Below are positions 42,809 through 51,304 of a stretch of DNA of 64,000 nt, piece by piece; the first letter of the stretch is position 1; each line of letters begins with the position of its first letter. Made by a program: the position numbers and the translations under genes. The stretch is from Salisapilia sapeloensis CBS 127946 (lineage: Eukaryota; Protista; Oomycota). The notes below the pieces were generated by a model that saw nothing but the letters and a program-made list of their open reading frames with translations, did no database searches and was not told the DNA's origin. The stretch lies in contig JAADVB010000028.1 of the NCBI GenBank assembly GCA_023334545.1, positions 1 to 64,000 of the forward strand, given 5' to 3'.

Positions 42809-44868
42809 TTACTTGATTGATGCAAGTAGCTTTCGCTCCCCTGCTCTTGCAAGACCAATTCTTTCAGCTAGAAACTTGGCGCAGATTGCACGACGTGAAT
42901 AGAGTGTCGTCCAGAGGATTGGATTTGTTGGTCTATCGCTTTGGGATGGTTGAACTGGAGATTTATTCGGTGCACCGAATGAGAAAAGGAGGTGGCGAGG
43001 TGGGAGGGCGTGGAATTCATATATCCATGCACTTTCAAGCGCTGATATGGATTGTGATGGGTATATGTCAGTGACGATGGACTGTATGAGTCGTGTCGGC
43101 CAGAACTTACTACGTCCGATATCGACAGGAACTTGGCCGGCTGCTTCTCGAGCGTAGGATGGTTGCCAGGAGCAGGTTGGATTATTATCATTCTCTGCGG
43201 TGGCTATGGCTTTAAGAGAAGACGGCTTTGGTTGCTGGACGTTTGCAGGGTACGAGGCTCGTAGTATGCAAACGATCCACACAATTGCCATTTCCTCATC
43301 GCTACTGCTATCACTAATTTGGAAGCGACGTCGACCTGCTCCTACAACTTGGTGGCTCTCGTCTATCAGAATGCAATCAAAGTCAGTCGATGAAGACGTT
43401 TTACCAGCGCCTTCTGAAGTCTGTGTCGTTGCGATATCATCATTACATGCATGAAGATGAACGGATGAAAATAATTGCTCTGATAATAACGCAGCGTGCT
43501 GGATATCCATTGCGATAAAGTCCTGGTAACACAGTGGATGCTGTAGAACACAGGCGTTGCAGTAAAATACTTCCGGATCCAGTTGATGTCTGGCAAGTGC
43601 AGACCAGCGACTGCATTTAGTGTGGTAGATTTGGCCGCAACCGACCTTCTTGCACAGCAAAAACTTGGTCGGCTTTGATTTTAGGCTTACTCGTATTCTC
43701 TTCGAGCACATTCCACATGACCTTGAAGCCAATGCACCACGTTCATCGAAGTGAGCAATACTCTTGGACTCGACTTGCATATCTGTTCCTCGCTGCTTTC
43801 TCCCCTTGCCTTTAACATTCGAGTATGAGTCGTTCATCTGCCGTTGTGGACCAGTGTAATTCTGTACTTGTAGTACGACAGAGTATTGGGATGTGATCGA
43901 TGCTGTGAGCATCAGTGTATAGTTATCGCCATCGCTTTCAATGGTGCCTGTTGTACCTCGTTCTTGCATTGGTTTGATTGTAAGACCAAGAGGCTCGACT
44001 GGAATAAGAAGGATATTTGTGAGTTCTCGGATGAGTACATCCTTCATGATGCGATGAACGGACTAGATGCATAAAAACTAGCTGTTGATAAAGTAAGCAG
44101 ACAACAATGTAATCTATTCATACCTCTAGTTTGAGTTCAAGCAATGGCGACTTGGTGATATTCCACAAGGTAGCAGCGACATACGTCTTCACGTCTAACG
44201 CGAGAGAGTACTAAGTATAAGTCGAAACGACGTGGATTACGCGCAGCTCACCTCCGTCATTGCACTTGAGTAGACTTAAAAGCACATTAATGCCCGAAAT
44301 ATTATCCAGGTGTAGCTGGCACTCATTTTGGACACTAAAAGATAGGACTGCTGCTGCACTAACACGTCGAAGTATCGCTGGTCCTTGCTGCGAGTAAATG
44401 AGAAGAGTGTACAGCGGACAGTTGTGACGATGAGATACACACCCCCACCTACCGTCGCCAATGAAGTAAGCCCTAAGTTTCCAAACGTTATCCTCATGCA
44501 GTGCAACCTTACCTATCACAAGAGCTTCCGCTCATTCTGGCACGTACTGAGTGAGCCAAGTTGCCCAAGATACTACCATGAACCCATTCACAAAGTTATT
44601 ACAAGATTTGTACATGTAATATTGAGGAAAGGGATGAATACCTCGCACAGATTTGACGAATGGAATCATAAGCCGTTGCCTGCATCATCTTGGTGGTACG
44701 ACGGACGCCCTGAGCTTGAACTAGTTTCTCCCGAAGAGCACACTCTCTTGACATGACCAGGATCTTTCGCATGTCTTCAACTACATCGCTCTCTTTCCTT
44801 GGCCTCGTCAAGTTTTCATTGCGTCCAAATAACTCCTCGACCTCGTTGTAGATATTTTCACTCGTCAT
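42809..44868 (-). CDS. ARM-repeat + PHD finger + putative degenerate GNAT protein (5 exons)
   Basis: Four GT-AG introns link ARM-like exons (ASILGNLAH, SAAAVLSFS, GINVLLSLLK, KTYVAATLWNIT) to the 412-aa ORF carrying the PHD CGMC...CKKVGCGQIYHTKC...FYCNAC. ATG at 44868. Confidence 0.65.
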
Positions 44869-44965: not shown

Positions 44966-47900
44966 CTAGTCTTCACTAGTGTCACAAAATTGGAGAAGGC
45001 AGAGCGCACAGCTCTTTGTACCATCTATTTTAGCATCATCAGATGCCACGTCTCTCTTGAGGTTGAGTTCAAGACCTTGCACTGTCGGTACTTTCAACCC
45101 CGCTCGCCAGTACAAGTATATCGACAAATTGGCCACAAGCACGAAGACGACACAGTTCAGCTGAAAGAACCAACTTATACCGTTCATCCATGCCCATGAA
45201 CGCCAAGCAGCGTCTTCAGAGGAGACGGTGGGAGAGCACCAAAGTAGGTGGATAACCGTCGAAAGTGTCAGGATGTTGTAAAGACGATGGATTATCTGCA
45301 CTGGCAAGGAGCTTGCATCTCCAATCTTCTCTATGCAACGCTCAAACCGAGGCGTATTGGTTATAAAGCATATCGCCATCGCATACACGATCCAGCAATA
45401 GAGGGCGAGGCATCCCCATCCGATCTGCTGAAAGCCATACGCTACGAAGAAGCTTGTCATGGGCACAGTAAAGATGTTCTGGTCGAATAGTCCTTCTTCG
45501 GATCGTACGTCTTTAACTACTGTCTCCACTAGCTCGAGCATCGTTAAAGGCACACGAGCTGAGGCACTTGCTTTCAGTGAATTACAAATGGGGCAACGGA
45601 GACTTGACTCTAGTAGCTTTTTATCCTTGTCGATCGCATACTTCTCCAAACATACTCGATGACCTCCGATTCTACTCAGACTAATCGGATCAGTGCATTC
45701 GCACAACGTGATCCATGTTGTCGGGACATGCCGTGGACAGTTTTGTGTCAGCTCCCACTTGCGTACTTGTCGAGAAATGTATTCCACTTGCTCACAAACG
45801 ACGCAGTGCATCAAGCACTCTTGCAGTTCTCGTCCGAGACATAGAAACCTCCATGCATCTTTCGTCCAATGCATTGGCTTTGGTGTACTCTGTTCCGGAA
45901 GGTTGCCTATTACTCTTATGCATGTCGATTCAGATCGACATAGCGCTGTATCAGCAAATGATGTCGTTCTAAGCGCAGTAGCATTATCGACTTTCCATGA
46001 TAGACGTAAAGCAGGCGCTTGCCTAGTTCGGTGACTGATCGCATTGATGCTCATAGTAGCCATAAAGATCTCCTTCCAGAGAGAGGCATCATCTAGTCGC
46101 CGAAGTTCTTTACATGTAGATGTAAAGGCGACGACATCTGCTATCTGCAAGAAGTCTACGATTCGGACAAAGATATCTTCAGGAAGCTCAATCGATAGCG
46201 TCTTGGTAGCTACCTCCGTCTTGTGTGAAATCTGAGCTCCTGCCGTAGACGCCGGGAGGACGATTCGCTGATGGAAAAAGTAGGACACAGAGACGACACC
46301 GGCAGAGCAGAGGATGAGAACGAGGTGTGCAAAGTCAAAGTTCGACATACTAGTACGCTCTAGACGAGTGATACAGGTCGCTATGACCACAGCGAAGGCA
46401 GCAGACGCATACTTGCTTGTAGAAGCGGATGCTGTGCCTACCAATGGCCAACGAAAGAGACATCTTGTAGCTGCTTTCTTGTCCGAGATTTGACGTTCAT
46501 CGTCTGACGCGTGAAGCAGGACGACTTGCGCCAAGACACCTACTGACCCAGCAAATGTGCCCATGTACCCTGTTTGAGGAGATAGGGTAGGCTCATGCTT
46601 TAAAGCCTCTTCGATCGTCCAAACATTGTAAGCAAAGAGAGCTCCTAGGAGTAATGTAAACGACCAGAGAGCGTAGCCAACGACAATCAGGACGATGCTT
46701 CCACCAAATGGCTTGGTGTCTTTCGGGTGAGCTTTTGTAACGTATTGATACGTCATGGGCACGGATGAAAAGAGTGCTACTACTGCACAAGCAGTCAAAG
46801 GGAAAACAGGGATCTTCGGGCCAACATACAACAAAGCAGCATCGACAAGAACCAAGACGCTGCATGCCGACACGCCAATGAATAGACCGATGAGCAGCCT
46901 CCCAATGTCTTGCACTTGAGACTTCATGTGCTTTGGAAGGTAAAAAATCGAGGTAGAAACTTCTTCCAATCCAGCATCATTCGGACGAAACAATGGAATG
47001 GAGTAGAGTAGGAGCAACTGTGCTATCCCGTACATGGCAGCAGATGCAAAGTGAACACCAGCTACTTTGAAAAGGACTTCTCGCCAGCATAAGATCGTGA
47101 TGGAGAAGATCAGCGCGACACTCAGGATCGTCCATGCGACTCCTTGCATCGTCACGAACCTCAAGCCACCTCGAAAAGGCTGATAGAAAGTGTAAGCTGG
47201 GTGAAGGGCAGGCCCAGATGCACCGTGCGTCAGCAACATACCGACGACAGACGACGCACAGCCGAAAGAGTACATGACTTCTCGAACTGGGAATGAATAT
47301 TCGACTCCTCTTAGGAACTCAGAGGCAGCCAGTAGGGAGCTGGAACCGACTGTGATGAAGATATTGACTGCTGCTCGCCACTTTAGCGAAGCGATATCTG
47401 ATAAGACGGATGTGTTTCGTTCAAGAACTTGGTCAGTGCATGTAGATGGCTCAGGGGAGAGTTGGAACGAAGTCATGGACCACAGGAGGCACATGGGTGG
47501 GAAGATTCCGAAGACACCAAGCAAACTGTAAACGCCTGTGGGTAATTCACCAGTTGAATGCAGTAAAGCAAGGCTTTCAAAGAGGATGTCAACTGCAAAG
47601 AGTGTCCAGCCAAGACCTTGGCGAATGACATGGTCCGAGCCTCCTTCAAAAGGTTGCCACAATCGAAACTTATCATACAGACGCGTGCCGGAGAATTGTG
47701 CAACGATCGACGCGATGATTATCATGGAGACTCCGATCGTCAAGATGAAGGCCTGGAGTGGTTCATGCATCTCGTCTTTATACATGTCCACAATCGCATG
47801 TACCACTAAAGAGGAAAGACAACACAAAATCACCATGGCGTTCTCTCCTTTTGCCGAGTCTGGTTTATCCATAGATGCACTGCGAGGACGGTTGCCAACT

Positions 47901-49312
47901 GCAGGACGAAGAGAGGTATCAGAAGGAACAAAGTAGGATAGAGAGACGCCAATGGCGAAGGCCGCGGCGACTCCGAGTCCAAGGACGAAGAGAGAAGGGA
48001 GTTCCCCCATCCTGTCTCGATTGAGACAAAGGACGATGGAGAGTGCGAGGAAGAAGCCGTACCAGAGCCAGCCGATGGTCTGAAGAAAGACGAACTTGGC
48101 GCCTCCACGAAAGGGCTGCCACACTTGATACCCAGCACATGAACGCAAGCCAGCAGTATGAGCGACAGGGGTAGCTAGAGCGATGGACAGAATATAGAGT
48201 TTCCACAGCGCGAGCGTGTGGCCTTGGACGAATCTGTTCATGGCACTAGGTAATGCCTCGGCACGTGCACAATGAGAGAGAGCTCCACCAGCTAGCGCCC
48301 AGACACACATGATGACACTCACGTAGAGCTGTCGAGGTCTGTTGCGTAGGAAGTGATCTTCATGAGATTTAAACTTACTAGGTGCGTCCGTCGCGTACGG
48401 TCGAAAGTATTGGAGTGATAGCAAAAGGAGGATCTGAGAGACAAGACCGTTGACGCCGATGAAGGCTATGGTCCCGACGGAGTACACTGGCATGGAGCCT
48501 GTAGTAGAGTCTTCGACGGTAATGAGGAGCAAAGCCCCTGCTAAGGAGCATGCAAAGAGCTGCCAGCCAATGTATTGAACCAGTAGAAACATTCGTCCAC
48601 CTTCAAAGGGCTGCCAGAGCTTATATCCAGGCACGTCTCTCCATCCACAACCGACGTGGATGAGCACTGCTGATATGATAAACTCGATGCAAGCAGTGAT
48701 GAGGACGCTGGATGTGTGCAAGGTATGCTTCTCGTCTACTTCTATTAAGATGAACATGAGTGCGCCAGACGTCGCTAGCAAGAGACCTAATGCAGCCTTG
48801 ACGCTCTTCCACGGAGCTCGTGGTCTATTTGATGAAAGCGTTCCCGTCGTATCGACACTTGGATGAAATGTACTAAAAGAATGTCTAGGAGGTTTATCGC
48901 AACAGTTGAGACTGAGATTTAGCAGGATCTGCGCAGAGAAGCTGATAACGCCTAGAAAGAGGTACTGCCCATCAAACCACTTGGCTTTCTCTACATTCGC
49001 GACACTGACGACTGCTGCCGTCAAAGACAGGGTATGTAGCGTCCATCCGATGGTCTGTAAGAATATAAATTCCAGTCCACCTTCAAATGGCATCCACCAT
49101 CGAAACGTAGAGGACTGTAGTGAACCAGCTAGTAACGTCAGTGGGCCTGTCCAGGCAAAGCTTAGAGCTCCAATTGCAATCAAAGTCCATGCCGATTCTG
49201 AAACTACTTCTGCAGCAATGTAGAGGAAGAAAGCAGCAACAGAAAGTACCAAAGCACCTAGCCGTAGTTCTTGACTTGACCGCTGCATGAGACAAGAGGA
49301 AGTGTCGATCAT
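44966..49312 (-). CDS. 1448-aa polytopic membrane protein: six PFxGG repeats + F-box-like + RING-CH-like finger + C-terminal TM helices
   Basis: Intronless ORF. Repeats: WMPFEGGLEFIFLQTIGW, WQPFEGGRMFLLVQYIGW, WQPFRGGAKFVFLQTIGW, WQPFEGGSDHVIRQGLGW, YQPFRGGLRFVTMQGVAW, KPFGGSIVLIVVGY. F-box-like ELPEDIFVRIVDFL...TCKELRRL...LWK. RING-CH-like CVVC...CEC...HRVC...CPIC. Confidence 0.75.
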   Translation of the reverse strand: MIDTSSCLMQRSSQELRLGALVLSVAAFFLYIAAEVVSESAWTLIAIGALSFAWTGPLTLLAGSLQSSTFRWWMPFEGGLEFIFLQTIGWTLHTLSLTAAVVSVANVEKAKWFDGQYLFLGVISFSAQILLNLSLNCCDKPPRHSFSTFHPSVDTTGTLSSNRPRAPWKSVKAALGLLLATSGALMFILIEVDEKHTLHTSSVLITACIEFIISAVLIHVGCGWRDVPGYKLWQPFEGGRMFLLVQYIGWQLFACSLAGALLLITVEDSTTGSMPVYSVGTIAFIGVNGLVSQILLLLSLQYFRPYATDAPSKFKSHEDHFLRNRPRQLYVSVIMCVWALAGGALSHCARAEALPSAMNRFVQGHTLALWKLYILSIALATPVAHTAGLRSCAGYQVWQPFRGGAKFVFLQTIGWLWYGFFLALSIVLCLNRDRMGELPSLFVLGLGVAAAFAIGVSLSYFVPSDTSLRPAVGNRPRSASMDKPDSAKGENAMVILCCLSSLVVHAIVDMYKDEMHEPLQAFILTIGVSMIIIASIVAQFSGTRLYDKFRLWQPFEGGSDHVIRQGLGWTLFAVDILFESLALLHSTGELPTGVYSLLGVFGIFPPMCLLWSMTSFQLSPEPSTCTDQVLERNTSVLSDIASLKWRAAVNIFITVGSSSLLAASEFLRGVEYSFPVREVMYSFGCASSVVGMLLTHGASGPALHPAYTFYQPFRGGLRFVTMQGVAWTILSVALIFSITILCWREVLFKVAGVHFASAAMYGIAQLLLLYSIPLFRPNDAGLEEVSTSIFYLPKHMKSQVQDIGRLLIGLFIGVSACSVLVLVDAALLYVGPKIPVFPLTACAVVALFSSVPMTYQYVTKAHPKDTKPFGGSIVLIVVGYALWSFTLLLGALFAYNVWTIEEALKHEPTLSPQTGYMGTFAGSVGVLAQVVLLHASDDERQISDKKAATRCLFRWPLVGTASASTSKYASAAFAVVIATCITRLERTSMSNFDFAHLVLILCSAGVVSVSYFFHQRIVLPASTAGAQISHKTEVATKTLSIELPEDIFVRIVDFLQIADVVAFTSTCKELRRLDDASLWKEIFMATMSINAISHRTRQAPALRLSWKVDNATALRTTSFADTALCRSESTCIRVIGNLPEQSTPKPMHWTKDAWRFLCLGRELQECLMHCVVCEQVEYISRQVRKWELTQNCPRHVPTTWITLCECTDPISLSRIGGHRVCLEKYAIDKDKKLLESSLRCPICNSLKASASARVPLTMLELVETVVKDVRSEEGLFDQNIFTVPMTSFFVAYGFQQIGWGCLALYCWIVYAMAICFITNTPRFERCIEKIGDASSLPVQIIHRLYNILTLSTVIHLLWCSPTVSSEDAAWRSWAWMNGISWFFQLNCVVFVLVANLSIYLYWRAGLKVPTVQGLELNLKRDVASDDAKIDGTKSCALCLLQFCDTSED

Positions 49313-49406
49313 AGAAGGTGTCAGGCTAATTCACAGCCTTATTCAGCTCTATTTTAGTCTGATGGATAAATATAGCATCATTCGATTCTCGACACAAAGT
49401 ACAAAA

Positions 49407-51304
49407 ATGCGTTTTGGAGGCTTTGGGGTGCTTGTGCTCGGGTTTTGCCGAGCTGTTCAAGCTACTTCGTACTGTCTAGATGCTGCATTAGAACTGCACT
49501 TTGATGAGGAGTCAATAGCTAGAGCCCAGTATGCTGAATTGAAGGAAAAATTGCGAGCTGATAGGAGCTGCCTGCGACATCAGGCGAATACGGCCGTGAT
49601 TGATAACTTGCAAAGGAGAATTCCATCTATGGAGTCACATGCAGTGGATTGCATGGGTTTGAGTACACCAGACGAACAGGACAAGAAGCCTGGTATGTTG
49701 TCGATCGTGTCTATATGCTCCAAGACGCAAGATGCTAGGACGGACGAATGGGAGTCTGGTGTGCATCAGCTACTAGAAAAAGCATACCCGACAGGTGCAG
49801 ACGACAACAGAATTGCCATGGGTGATTTGACGGCCTTAGTTTCATCTGTCATGATTTCAGACGGGTATGAACTGCCGACAGGAACTGGCATGCCAAGTTT
49901 CGAGCTGCTTCACGCTGAATTTAACATTGATTCGTTCTCCAAAGCAAGCCAAGTGGATCTCACGATAGGTAACAACGGCAAAGTACCTTTATACGTCTTT
50001 GGTACCGCTGCAACCCACCGTGAGACGCATGAGTCGACAATATTTATGGCCAAGGAGGTAGCAACGATCCTGCCATCTCAATCCCAATCAATCGCATTCA
50101 CCTCTTCTTTCGAAATGCACATTGGATACAACGAAAGTATCGTCCTGTACGTTGGTCACAGTAGTTTCCTAGCCCATCGCTTCACCGGTGTCGTCCAAGA
50201 TGTTACTTTTCTGTTTGAAGCTCCTGCATCCTTCGGTCGCTCCGTCTTCCAAGCACGAGATGGCACCCCTCTGGATCCATCGACCTTGACGTCAGATGTG
50301 ACTTCTCTATTCCCTTCTTTTCCGTATTCAGCCTGGAAAGTCTACTCAATCGTCCTTGTCGTCGTCGTGGCAATCACGACAGTCTTGTACGTACGACGGA
50401 AGTGGGCTCGGAAGATCCGGCTGGTGTGTGGCAGCAGCCAGATAGCATCTCGAGTCCCCACGAGAGAGCAGAGGCAGCAGCAAGCACAAGCAAGTGGGTA
50501 TACTCCATCCACTTCAGATGACATAGGAAAGCAGCAAGGTGCTAGTCACACTGGCATTGAGATGGGACCGGTAAAGTCTGCTAGTACCAAGACTGTGCCT
50601 ACGGAGTGGGGATTAAATACAGAGGCAGGTGCTTCGTGGAGGCCAAAGACCAAGTACGTATGTGTAGCTATCGCTGGACGATATGTGCTTACGTTGGACA
50701 AAGTAGATTACCTCTAAAGAAGCCATTAAAACAACCGACTACGACTCAGACACCTCCAAGGTAGAGTCTAGACGTTGTTTAGAAGCTATTGCTGATAGAT
50801 TGACATCTATGGGAATAGTCGAAGTGTATCAGCTGTGTCTGAAAGGAAGCAGGTGCAAGCGAAACCTTCGTATACATTGGTCTTGGACGAGGCTATACGA
50901 TCGTTAAGTGGACAAGAGTTTGAACGATTATGGGAGGAATATGTAGAGAGGTATCATTGCACTTGCTGATAGTGTCTACGAAGGTGACTAATGAGATCAT
51001 CCTATTGTACAGGAGCGTGGCTACGTTTCAACTATCCTCTGCACTTGATGGCGAACGTTTAGTACAGAAGATGGAGGAGCATCACGTCGCTTGCATCGCG
51101 AGTGGAGCTGTCGATGGTACACAAAAGTTCGTCTTCTACGGCAAAGTCAAGGGGGAAGGAGACTACCTGTTAGAGACAGTCGACGTGACTTCCACCTTTG
51201 ACACTTCCCTCCACCTCCGAACCTCGAGACTTCTAGCAGGAAATATCGTCCAGGCATTCGAAGCATTCGTCCGACAGCAAGTGACAAGTTGCATGCAGCA
51301 ATAA
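49407..51304 (+). CDS. Type I membrane protein with LamG/ConA-like ectodomain and cytosolic beta-adaptin appendage-like domain (4 exons)
   Basis: Signal peptide MRFGGFGVLVLGFCRAVQA and TM AWKVYSIVLVVVVAITTVLYV followed by RRKW. Three phase-2 GT-AG introns (from about 50656, 50760 and 50951) keep the frame into LVLDE...SGQEFERLWEEY...VACIASGAVDGTQKFVFYG. TAA at 51302-51304. Confidence 0.7.

What the first reader, a model, noticed from the sequence alone, without database searches (positions are those of the whole stretch)
44966..49312. Giant membrane protein joining six PFxGG-Q-GW membrane repeats to an F-box-like segment and a RING-CH-like finger
Seen in sequence: one intronless 1448-aa ORF has a hydrophobic unit repeated six times (motifs near 49090, 48610, 48110, 47650, 47175 and a degenerate one near 46710), each with [WY]xPFxGG..F..[LM]Q..GW. 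It is followed by an F-box-like stretch (about 46070-46195), a C4HC3-spaced Cys/His cluster (about 45580-45810), several more TM helices and a terminal CxxCxxxFC. Established: F-boxes recruit substrates to SKP1-cullin ligases, and RING-CH plus TM helices defines MARCH/Doa10-type membrane E3 ligases. The two are normally in separate proteins. Inference: this could be a membrane-embedded sensor or transporter-like module wired to two ubiquitination routes. I do not know a described family with this architecture.
Basis: partly seen in the sequence, partly recalled or inferred. Interest (0 to 1): 0.75.

Follow-up and report, generated by a model that had tools for sequence, protein, structure and literature searches.

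The report
Membrane F-box protein with lipid-enzyme repeats
This water mould gene joins a huge membrane part, which other microbes attach to fat- and sterol-ester enzymes, to two parts typical of protein-tagging (ubiquitin) machinery, so it may link membrane lipid state to protein destruction.

Summary
Window 44966-49312 (-) is one open 1448-aa frame. It has five clear 4-helix membrane repeats and one degenerate one ([WY]xPFxGG...Q..GW), then a Pfam-supported F-box, a conserved C4HC3 Cys/His cluster, more membrane helices and a conserved C-terminal CxxCxxxxC.

The whole architecture is conserved full-length in Pythium, Globisporangium, Lagenidium, Saprolegnia, Achlya, Thraustotheca and Aphanomyces, so it is one gene.

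The Cys/His cluster is a RING-like finger. Its best profile match is RING-H2, and its best structural match is the PHF7 RING, weakly. It fails the RINGv/RING-CH model, so it is not a MARCH/Doa10 member.

The new result concerns the repeat, which is in no Pfam family. A profile of the six window repeats finds 496 proteins. Of 60 long relatives scanned (four of them F-box-type), 36 carry a DGAT2-type acyltransferase and 12 an Abhydrolase_3 esterase. The same genome also has a 727-aa DGAT2 with two repeats. For a thraustochytrid sterol acyltransferase of this layout, published work shows that deleting the first eight helices keeps activity and raises protein level.

Best reading: an ER-membrane SCF substrate receptor that uses a lipid-enzyme regulatory module. 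The function is inferred.

The scan had noted this same stretch in another window (s1-296594), not on other DNA.

The parts
44966..49312 (-). Whole ORF, 1448 aa; probable true start at Met9 (nt 49288)
   Evidence: orthologue N-termini in alignment A1
48881..49288 (-). Repeat 1 (res 9-144), 4 helices, WMPFEGG at res 73
48359..48817 (-). Repeat 2 (res 166-318), WQPFEGG at res 233
47900..48337 (-). Repeat 3 (res 326-471), WQPFRGG at res 398
47402..47869 (-). Repeat 4 (res 482-637), WQPFEGG at res 552
46946..47389 (-). Repeat 5 (res 642-789), YQPFRGG at res 710
46493..46927 (-). Repeat 6 (res 796-940), degenerate, KPFGG at res 868; same four-helix layout
   Evidence: only a weak cross-hit (E 4e-4)
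46247..46429 (-). Two further predicted helices (res 962-1022), a probable membrane hairpin before the F-box
46061..46189 (-). F-box-like domain (res 1042-1084)
   Evidence: Pfam PF12937 E 2.8e-6, over the cut-off; 9 of 11 orthologues; best PDB profile hit is the FBXO3 F-box, weak
45584..45805 (-). C4HC3 RING-like zinc finger (res 1170-1243): C-x2-C-x30-C-x-C-x11-H-x2-C-x18-C-x2-C
   Evidence: ligand conservation; hhalign versus RING-H2 P 1.5e-4; PHF7 RING Z 3.7
45095..45481 (-). C-terminal membrane helices (res 1278-1406), two strongly and two moderately hydrophobic
44984..45010 (-). Conserved tail CxxCxxxxC (C1435, C1438, C1443)
   Evidence: nearly invariant in alignment A1

Best explanation
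The gene encodes a polytopic membrane F-box protein of about 28-30 helices, probably in the ER. An F-box protein is the substrate-receptor subunit of an SCF (Skp1-cullin) ubiquitin ligase.

Its N-terminal 24 helices are six copies of a 4-helix repeat from a family that is not in Pfam. In other eukaryotes, 2-6 copies of this repeat sit in front of DGAT2-type acyltransferases, Abhydrolase_3 esterases and a few PlsC-type acyltransferases. In the one studied layout, thraustochytrid sterol O-acyltransferase DGAT2C, the repeat region is dispensable for catalysis but limits protein abundance.

In oomycetes the enzyme part has been replaced by a cytosolic F-box, a RING-like C4HC3 finger and a small C-terminal membrane bundle.

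Inferred mechanism: the repeat array reads or binds membrane lipid (sterol or neutral-lipid intermediates), or it pairs with the same repeats in the genome's own DGAT2C-like enzyme. Through Skp1 on the F-box, and possibly an E2 on the finger, it then couples that state to ubiquitination of membrane proteins.

Shown here: the domain parts, their conservation, the repeat's partners and the paralogue. Inferred: location, lipid responsiveness, substrates and E3 activity.
For: The single ORF is conserved full-length (29-40% identity, about 99% coverage) in seven oomycete genera.

The F-box is over Pfam's cut-off, and Skp1 is encoded in the same genome.

Eight Zn ligands are conserved in 15 relatives. 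The divergent members have compact classic C4HC3 spacing and a C-P-x-C. The best profile match is RING-H2 (prob 52%, P 1.5e-4), against PHD at 1.5%. The best structural match of the finger is the E2-binding RING of PHF7 (Z 3.7, rmsd 2.7 A, 61 residues, 25% identity).

The repeat profile finds 496 proteins. Of 60 long relatives scanned, DAGAT is in 36, Abhydrolase_3 in 12 and PF01553 in 4; no other Pfam family appeared, and four of the 60 are the divergent F-box-type members, which gave no Pfam hit.

Hondaea fermentalgiana DGAT2 matches the window-derived repeat profile at E 5e-22, with two repeats before its DAGAT domain. The own genome has a 727-aa DGAT2 with two repeats.

In A. limacinum DGAT2C, deleting TM1-8 keeps activity and ER localisation, raises protein level and raises total sterols about threefold (PMC10686087).

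Linkers and motif loops are K/R-rich. This puts them, and the F-box, finger and enzyme domains, on the cytosolic side.
Against: There is no experimental datum for this protein. The RING-like call rests on weak scores, and the AF2 model is of middling confidence (pLDDT 64). The LP of the F-box is not conserved in the Pythium-type orthologues. I could not check the A. limacinum DGAT2C sequence itself, so equating its TM1-8 with the two repeats rests on matching size and layout and on a thraustochytrid relative. The higher abundance of the truncated enzyme may have trivial causes, such as easier folding of a smaller protein. Fold searches give only generic four-helix bundles for the repeat, so nothing shows lipid binding.
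Confidence: 0.55

Rival explanations
1. It is a self-contained membrane RING E3 that works like MARCH/Doa10. The C4HC3 finger recruits an E2 directly, and the F-box is vestigial or only a dimerisation or Skp1-docking accessory.
For: C4HC3 ligands are conserved. In the window protein, the positions that contact E2 in PHF7 have fitting residues by pattern: V1172 in C-x-V-C, Y1225 after H-x2-C-L-E-K, and P1241 in C-P-x-C. The finger is flanked by membrane helices.
Against: The RINGv model does not match any orthologue. The Pro and the aromatic residue are not conserved in the Pythium or Saprolegnia orthologues, and the last ligand is His in Saprolegniales. The F-box itself is conserved and scores over the cut-off in most orthologues.
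Confidence: 0.15
2. The six repeats form a transporter or channel, for a lipid or a small solute. The cytosolic F-box and finger only govern its own turnover or gating.
For: There are 24 helices in repeated four-helix bundles. Polar residues in the helices are invariant across 22 relatives: H219, Q293, Q411, H696, D824, N132 and S134.
Against: In enzyme fusions the copy number varies from 2 to 6, which is odd for a fixed pore. The TM1-8 region of DGAT2C is dispensable for enzyme function. There is no structural match to any transporter, and AF2 does not fix an inter-repeat arrangement (pTM 0.43).
Confidence: 0.15
3. It is a gene-model artefact: two adjacent genes, a membrane protein and an F-box/zinc-finger protein, read as one.
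For: Many database relatives of 1130-1216 aa end shortly after the F-box, and no RNA data were available.
Against: The frame is open without a stop for 4.3 kb. Ten independent full-length orthologues cover about 99% of it, including the C-terminal helices and the Cys tail. The F-box lies only about 20 residues after a membrane helix.
Confidence: 0.02

Closest known systems
F-box proteins / SCF substrate receptors (Pfam PF12937, PF00646)
   Same: The F-box-like domain is over the curated cut-off, and a three-helix segment is predicted. Skp1 is present in the genome.
   Different: From my own knowledge, F-box proteins are normally soluble or lipid-anchored, with LRR, WD40 or other binding domains after the box. 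Here the box is embedded in a protein of about 28-30 helices and is followed by a RING-like finger.
Emi1/FBXO5 (F-box + zinc-binding region) and KDM2A/B (PHD + F-box); from my own knowledge
   Same: An F-box and a cross-brace or IBR-like zinc finger occur in one chain, so the pairing has precedent.
   Different: Those are soluble nuclear or cell-cycle proteins. No sequence relation to them was detected here.
MARCH / Doa10 (RING-CH + membrane helices; Pfam RINGv PF12906)
   Same: C4HC3 ligand order, C-x-C and H-x2-C-L spacing, and neighbouring membrane helices.
   Different: No RINGv HMM match in any orthologue. The loops are longer (x30, x11). The conserved Trp after H-x2-C-L-x2 is lacking. 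The finger lies between membrane blocks, not at the N-terminus. An F-box is present.
PHF7 RING domain (PDB 8jwj)
   Same: It is the best structural match of the Cys/His cluster: Z 3.7, rmsd 2.7 A, 61 residues, 25% identity.
   Different: The score is weak. PHF7 is a soluble histone E3 with PHD fingers.
Thraustochytrid DGAT2C sterol O-acyltransferase (A. limacinum, PMC10686087; Hondaea fermentalgiana DGAT2, P0185)
   Same: It carries the same 4-helix [WY]xPFxGG repeat at its N-terminus (E 5e-22 for Hondaea against the window-derived profile). This genome has its own 727-aa version.
   Different: It has two repeats, not six, and it ends in a DGAT2 catalytic domain instead of an F-box, finger and helices.
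Sterol-sensing domain shared by HMG-CoA reductase, SCAP and NPC1 (an analogy only; from my own knowledge)
   Same: A membrane module is shared between lipid enzymes and regulators and is tied to controlled protein abundance.
   Different: There is no homology and no Pfam hit. It has five helices, not a 4-helix repeat. Lipid sensing by the present repeat is unproven.

Membership tests
F-box (PF12937 / PF00646) | Match to the family HMM above the curated cut-off | tested here: met
   27.4 bits against 24.3 on the whole protein and 31 bits on the piece; 9 of 11 orthologues match
F-box (PF12937 / PF00646) | Three-helix fold that binds Skp1 | tested here: inconclusive
   AF2 predicts helices at residues 1045-1054, 1057-1066 and 1076-1087 with pLDDT about 59-74. 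Skp1 binding is not testable here. Skp1 is encoded in the genome.
RING-CH / RINGv (PF12906; MARCH, Doa10) | Match to the RINGv HMM | tested here: not met
   No hit at E<=10 in 11 orthologues. A genome-wide RINGv scan finds five other loci, not this one. hhalign against two own-genome RINGv domains gives prob 9.7%.
RING-CH / RINGv (PF12906; MARCH, Doa10) | C4HC3 ligand order with C-x-C and H-x2-C | tested here: met
   C1170, C1173, C1204, C1206, H1218, C1221, C1240 and C/H1243 are conserved
RING-CH / RINGv (PF12906; MARCH, Doa10) | Finger at the N-terminus, ahead of the membrane helices; conserved Trp after H-x2-C-L-x2 | tested here: not met
   The finger lies after 26 helices. That position holds Y in the window and is variable elsewhere.
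RING finger in general (cross-brace, E2-binding) | Eight conserved Zn ligands in cross-brace order | tested here: met
   Conserved in 15 sequences, including the compact divergent forms P0068 and P0139
RING finger in general (cross-brace, E2-binding) | Profile or structural similarity to known RINGs | tested here: inconclusive
   hhalign against 30 own-genome RING-H2 domains: prob 52%, P 1.5e-4, all four ligand pairs aligned. PHF7 RING: Z 3.7. Foldseek E about 0.5.
RING finger in general (cross-brace, E2-binding) | E2 binding and ubiquitin-transfer activity | not testable with these tools
   Needs an in vitro assay
PHD finger (PF00628) | Profile similarity | tested here: not met
   hhalign against 26 own-genome PHD fingers gives prob 1.5%; no Pfam hit
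[WY]xPFxGG 4-helix repeat family (undescribed; N-terminal module of DGAT2C-type enzymes) | Repeat profile match, and the same repeat present in enzyme fusions | tested here: met
   496 hits, 68 of them at E<=1e-30. Hondaea DGAT2 E 5e-22. Own-genome DGAT2 paralogue E 5e-16 (single-sequence search).
DGAT2 (PF03982) | DAGAT catalytic domain with HPHG | tested here: not met
   There is no DAGAT hit in this protein or its oomycete orthologues; only the repeat is shared

The most novel reading that the evidence does not exclude
The repeat is a new lipid-responsive membrane domain that controls protein stability, a functional analogue of the sterol-sensing domain. The oomycete protein would then be its dedicated degrader: an SCF receptor that recognises enzymes carrying the same repeat, such as the genome's own DGAT2C-like acyltransferase, by repeat-to-repeat pairing in the membrane. 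That would set sterol-ester or triacylglycerol synthesis.
Probability: 0.18. Interest if true: 0.85.

Novelty: new variant of a known kind. Interest (0 to 1): 0.64.

Why it matters
It gives a testable handle on an unannotated membrane domain present in many protist lipid enzymes. The published view that this N-terminal region is specific to thraustochytrids is too narrow, since the repeat occurs in euglenozoans, a raphidophyte, a chlorarachniophyte and oomycetes. It also points to an oomycete-wide, otherwise unseen type of membrane-embedded ubiquitin-ligase subunit. If the protein couples lipid state to protein turnover, it would be a new route of lipid homeostasis in a group that includes major plant and fish pathogens. 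It would also explain why trimming the repeats raises sterol-ester output in biotechnological strains.

Tried and rejected
1. Pfam on the whole protein and on nine pieces at E<=10 gave only F-box families plus noise: DUF423 0.16, DoxX_2 0.51, SecY 0.06, ECF_trnsprt 0.015, all far below their cut-offs.
2. The ESM Atlas gave nothing for the whole protein. For residues 1-480 it gave DUF2776/YhiM at 0.77, which is in the range of shuffled controls.
3. Foldseek against the PDB gave no significant match for either model.
4. VIA wide searches were dominated by generic helical bundles. The C-terminal bundle reached Z 8.8 and the repeats Z 9-12, below the level that is meaningful for helical bundles.
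5. The PDB sequence-profile search gave only the FBXO3 F-box at E 1.6.
6. The RING and PHD Pfam hits in the Lagenidium relative P0009 lie in a 695-aa N-terminal extension absent from all others. This is probably a merged neighbouring gene, so they are not evidence for the finger.
8. Only two structure jobs were allowed, so neither the zinc finger nor a single repeat could be folded alone.
9. I could not obtain the A. limacinum DGAT2C sequence. Two word searches from thraustochytrid-like relatives did not return a protein named so.
10. A remembered likeness of the motif to the DUF423 'PxGG..F..GW' was not tested.
Full report
**Observation**

The minus strand of the window carries one open frame, 44966-49312, of 1448 codons.

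- *Repeats.* A regular-expression scan finds [WY]xPFxGG at residues 73, 233, 398, 552 and 710, and a degenerate KPFGG at 868.
- *Unit layout.* Aligning the six roughly 158-aa units shows a shared plan: a helix ending in an acidic residue, a helix often ending in His, a 13-residue loop with the motif, a helix starting xFVxxQxxGW, and a helix with AQxLLxxSL.
- *Repeat statistics.* Profiles built from each orthologous unit hit the other units of the window protein at E 1e-11 to 1e-27 for units 1-5. Unit 6 is reached only weakly (E 4e-4), so it is a decayed copy with the same four-helix layout.
- *Other elements.* The F-box, the Cys/His cluster, the later hydrophobic helices and the Cys-rich tail are all at the stated places.
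- *Start codon.* Orthologues begin at the equivalent of Met9, so the true start is probably nt 49288. This also removes the apparent overlap with the divergent neighbouring ORF.

**One gene, conserved in oomycetes**

- Earlier notes of this scan call the genome an oomycete, and my hits agree.
- The word search returns full-length relatives (29-40% identity, about 99% coverage) from Pythium brassicae, P. insidiosum, Lagenidium giganteum, Thraustotheca, Saprolegnia diclina and S. parasitica, and Achlya. It also returns shorter relatives (35-79% coverage) from Globisporangium splendens and G. ultimum, and the profile search adds Aphanomyces stellatus.
- The alignment runs through the repeats, F-box, finger, C-terminal helices and tail. 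A two-gene artefact is therefore very unlikely.
- The databases name these proteins only 'hypothetical' or 'F-box domain-containing'.

**F-box**

- PF12937 scores 27.4 bits (cut-off 24.3) on the whole protein and 31 bits on the piece. PF00646 passes its cut-off on the piece.
- Nine of 11 orthologues match PF12937.
- The best PDB hit of the family profile is the F-box of FBXO3, though only at E 1.6.
- AF2 predicts the expected short helices at moderate confidence.
- The genome encodes Skp1.
- The Leu-Pro at the start of the box is kept in the window protein and in Saprolegniales, but not in the Pythium-type orthologues.

**Zinc finger**

- *Ligands.* Eight ligand positions are conserved: C1170-x2-C1173-x30-C1204-x-C1206-x11-H1218-x2-C1221-x18-C1240-x2-C1243. 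The last is His in Saprolegniales.
- *Divergent relatives.* Three metagenomic proteins (P0068, P0070, P0139) carry the F-box, finger and C-terminal parts according to my family HMMs. Two of them have a compact, textbook C-x2-C-x14-C-x2-C-x5-H-x2-C...C-x2-C spacing, with C-P-x-C in P0068.
- *RINGv test.* The RINGv model does not see the finger in any orthologue. A RINGv scan of the genome finds five other loci.
- *Profile-profile comparison.* I compared the finger with alignments I built from this genome's own domains. Against RING-H2 the result was prob 52%, P 1.5e-4, with all four ligand pairs aligned. RINGv gave 9.7%, from two sequences only, and PHD gave 1.5%. Control pairs of those families scored 89-93%.
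- *Structure.* The AF2 model of residues 961-1448 has pLDDT 64 overall and about 70-82 over the finger. Foldseek's top, non-significant rows are PHF7, the Slx1 RING and a VIN3 PHD. The VIA second look aligns model residues 205-293 to PHF7 residues 153-221 at Z 3.7, rmsd 2.7 A, 61 residues and 25% identity. That stretch is PHF7's E2-binding RING (PMC10760634).
- *E2-contact positions.* By pattern, the window protein has fitting residues at the three E2-contact positions (V1172, Y1225, P1241). The last two are not conserved in the Pythium or Saprolegnia orthologues.
- *Reading.* This is a genuine cross-brace, RING-like finger. Its E3 activity is open, and it is not a member of the RING-CH family.

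**What the repeat is**

- *No known family.* No Pfam family matches the repeat, either in this protein or in 60 relatives.
- *Profile search.* A profile of the six window repeats, searched against 1.84 billion representatives, gives 496 proteins at E<=1e-3 and 68 at E<=1e-30. Most are 1300-1650 aa, with 5-6 repeats at the N-terminus and 500-700 further residues.
- *Partner domains.* Pfam scans of 60 long relatives find DAGAT (DGAT2-type acyltransferase) in 36, Abhydrolase_3/BD-FAE in 12 (three of these also match steryl acetyl hydrolase Say1), and PF01553 in 4. No other family appeared, and four of the 60 are the divergent F-box-type members, which gave no Pfam hit.
- *Taxa.* Named sources are Entosiphon, Diplonema and Rhynchopus (Euglenozoa) and Chattonella (raphidophyte). 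Bigelowiella has the six-repeat array with no added domain.
- *Where the F-box type occurs.* The F-box/finger type is seen only in oomycetes and the few divergent metagenomic proteins.
- *Paralogue in this genome.* The window's genome also has a 727-aa protein (G000 contig C518; L002:307-2487:-). It has a degenerate first repeat, a canonical second one (YQPFTGG) and a DAGAT domain at E 3e-43.

**Link to experiment**

- Hondaea fermentalgiana 'diacylglycerol O-acyltransferase 2' (811 aa) matches the window-derived repeat profile at E 5e-22. It has two repeats (64-191 and 291-414), then further hydrophobic stretches, then DAGAT.
- This is the layout described for Aurantiochytrium limacinum DGAT2C, an ER sterol O-acyltransferase of about 99 kDa with 12 extra N-terminal helices.
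- In DGAT2C, deleting TM1-8 leaves sterol-ester synthesis and ER localisation intact, raises the protein level and raises total sterols about threefold. The authors suggest the region lowers expression or promotes degradation (PMC10686087).
- I could not check that sequence itself. Equating TM1-8 with the two repeats is therefore an inference from size, layout and a thraustochytrid relative.
- The paper states that the N-terminal helices are absent from DGAT2 of other eukaryotes. The present searches show the repeat is far more widespread.

**Topology**

- Across 22 relatives, the inter-repeat linkers and the motif loops hold most of the Lys and Arg. The helix 1-2 and helix 3-4 loops hold few.
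- By the positive-inside rule, the motif loops, the linkers and the C-terminal effector (F-box and finger, or enzyme) face the cytosol. An F-box and a DGAT2 domain both require this.
- AF2 predicts each repeat as a compact four-helix bundle (pLDDT about 80) but does not fix how the bundles pack (pTM 0.43).
- Structure searches return only generic four-helix bundles.

**Mechanism**

Best reading (0.55): an ER-membrane SCF substrate receptor. Its membrane array is a non-catalytic accessory domain of lipid-ester enzymes that limits their abundance, and here it is wired directly to ubiquitination parts.

It may report lipid state, or it may pair with the repeats of the DGAT2C-like paralogue and mark that enzyme for turnover. 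The second idea is the most novel reading (0.18).

Rivals:
- an autonomous RING E3 (0.15);
- a transporter with self-regulating turnover (0.15);
- a gene-model artefact (0.02).

**Comparison and novelty**

As an F-box protein it belongs to a known kind. An F-box next to a zinc finger has precedent in Emi1 and KDM2A/B (from my own knowledge). An F-box set inside a protein of about 28-30 helices, on a repeat otherwise reserved for DGAT2 and esterase enzymes, was found in no Pfam family or paper I searched. I rate it a new variant of a known kind. The repeat itself is an undescribed domain family.

**Limits**

No contig here looked human. No spliced model was needed.

Noticed in passing
G000 contig C518:2229-4409 (L002:307-2487, minus strand): A 727-aa DGAT2-type protein of the same genome has two N-terminal copies of the repeat (the first degenerate). 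It reads FQPHG where DGAT2 enzymes usually have HPHG. It is 29% identical to Hondaea DGAT2 over 540 residues.
   Followed up: partly
window 48826-48837, 48337-48348, 47881-47892 (res 159-162, 322-325, 474-477): The tetrapeptide NRPR recurs in three of the inter-repeat linkers of the window protein. It is not conserved as such in the orthologues (only R/K-x-P-x-E-x-Y at the second site). Its meaning is unknown.
   Followed up: no
window 49286-49312: The first ATG of the ORF lies 24 nt upstream of the Met that aligns with the orthologue starts. The longer reading overlaps the mechanical ORF 49287-50717 on the other strand.
   Followed up: partly
P0009 (Lagenidium giganteum, 2200 aa), residues 1-695: The database model carries an N-terminal extension with RING-H2 and PHD fingers that no other orthologue has. 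It is probably two genes merged in annotation.
   Followed up: partly
window 44984-45010 and res 1136, 1192: Besides the eight finger ligands, two orphan conserved Cys (C1136, C1192) and the tail C-x2-C-x4-C are nearly invariant. They could form a further metal site or be acylated. The AF2 model places a short strand after the last helix (res 1408-1412).
   Followed up: no
window 42809-44868: The next gene on the same strand starts only about 100 nt after this ORF's stop. I did not examine it.
   Followed up: no
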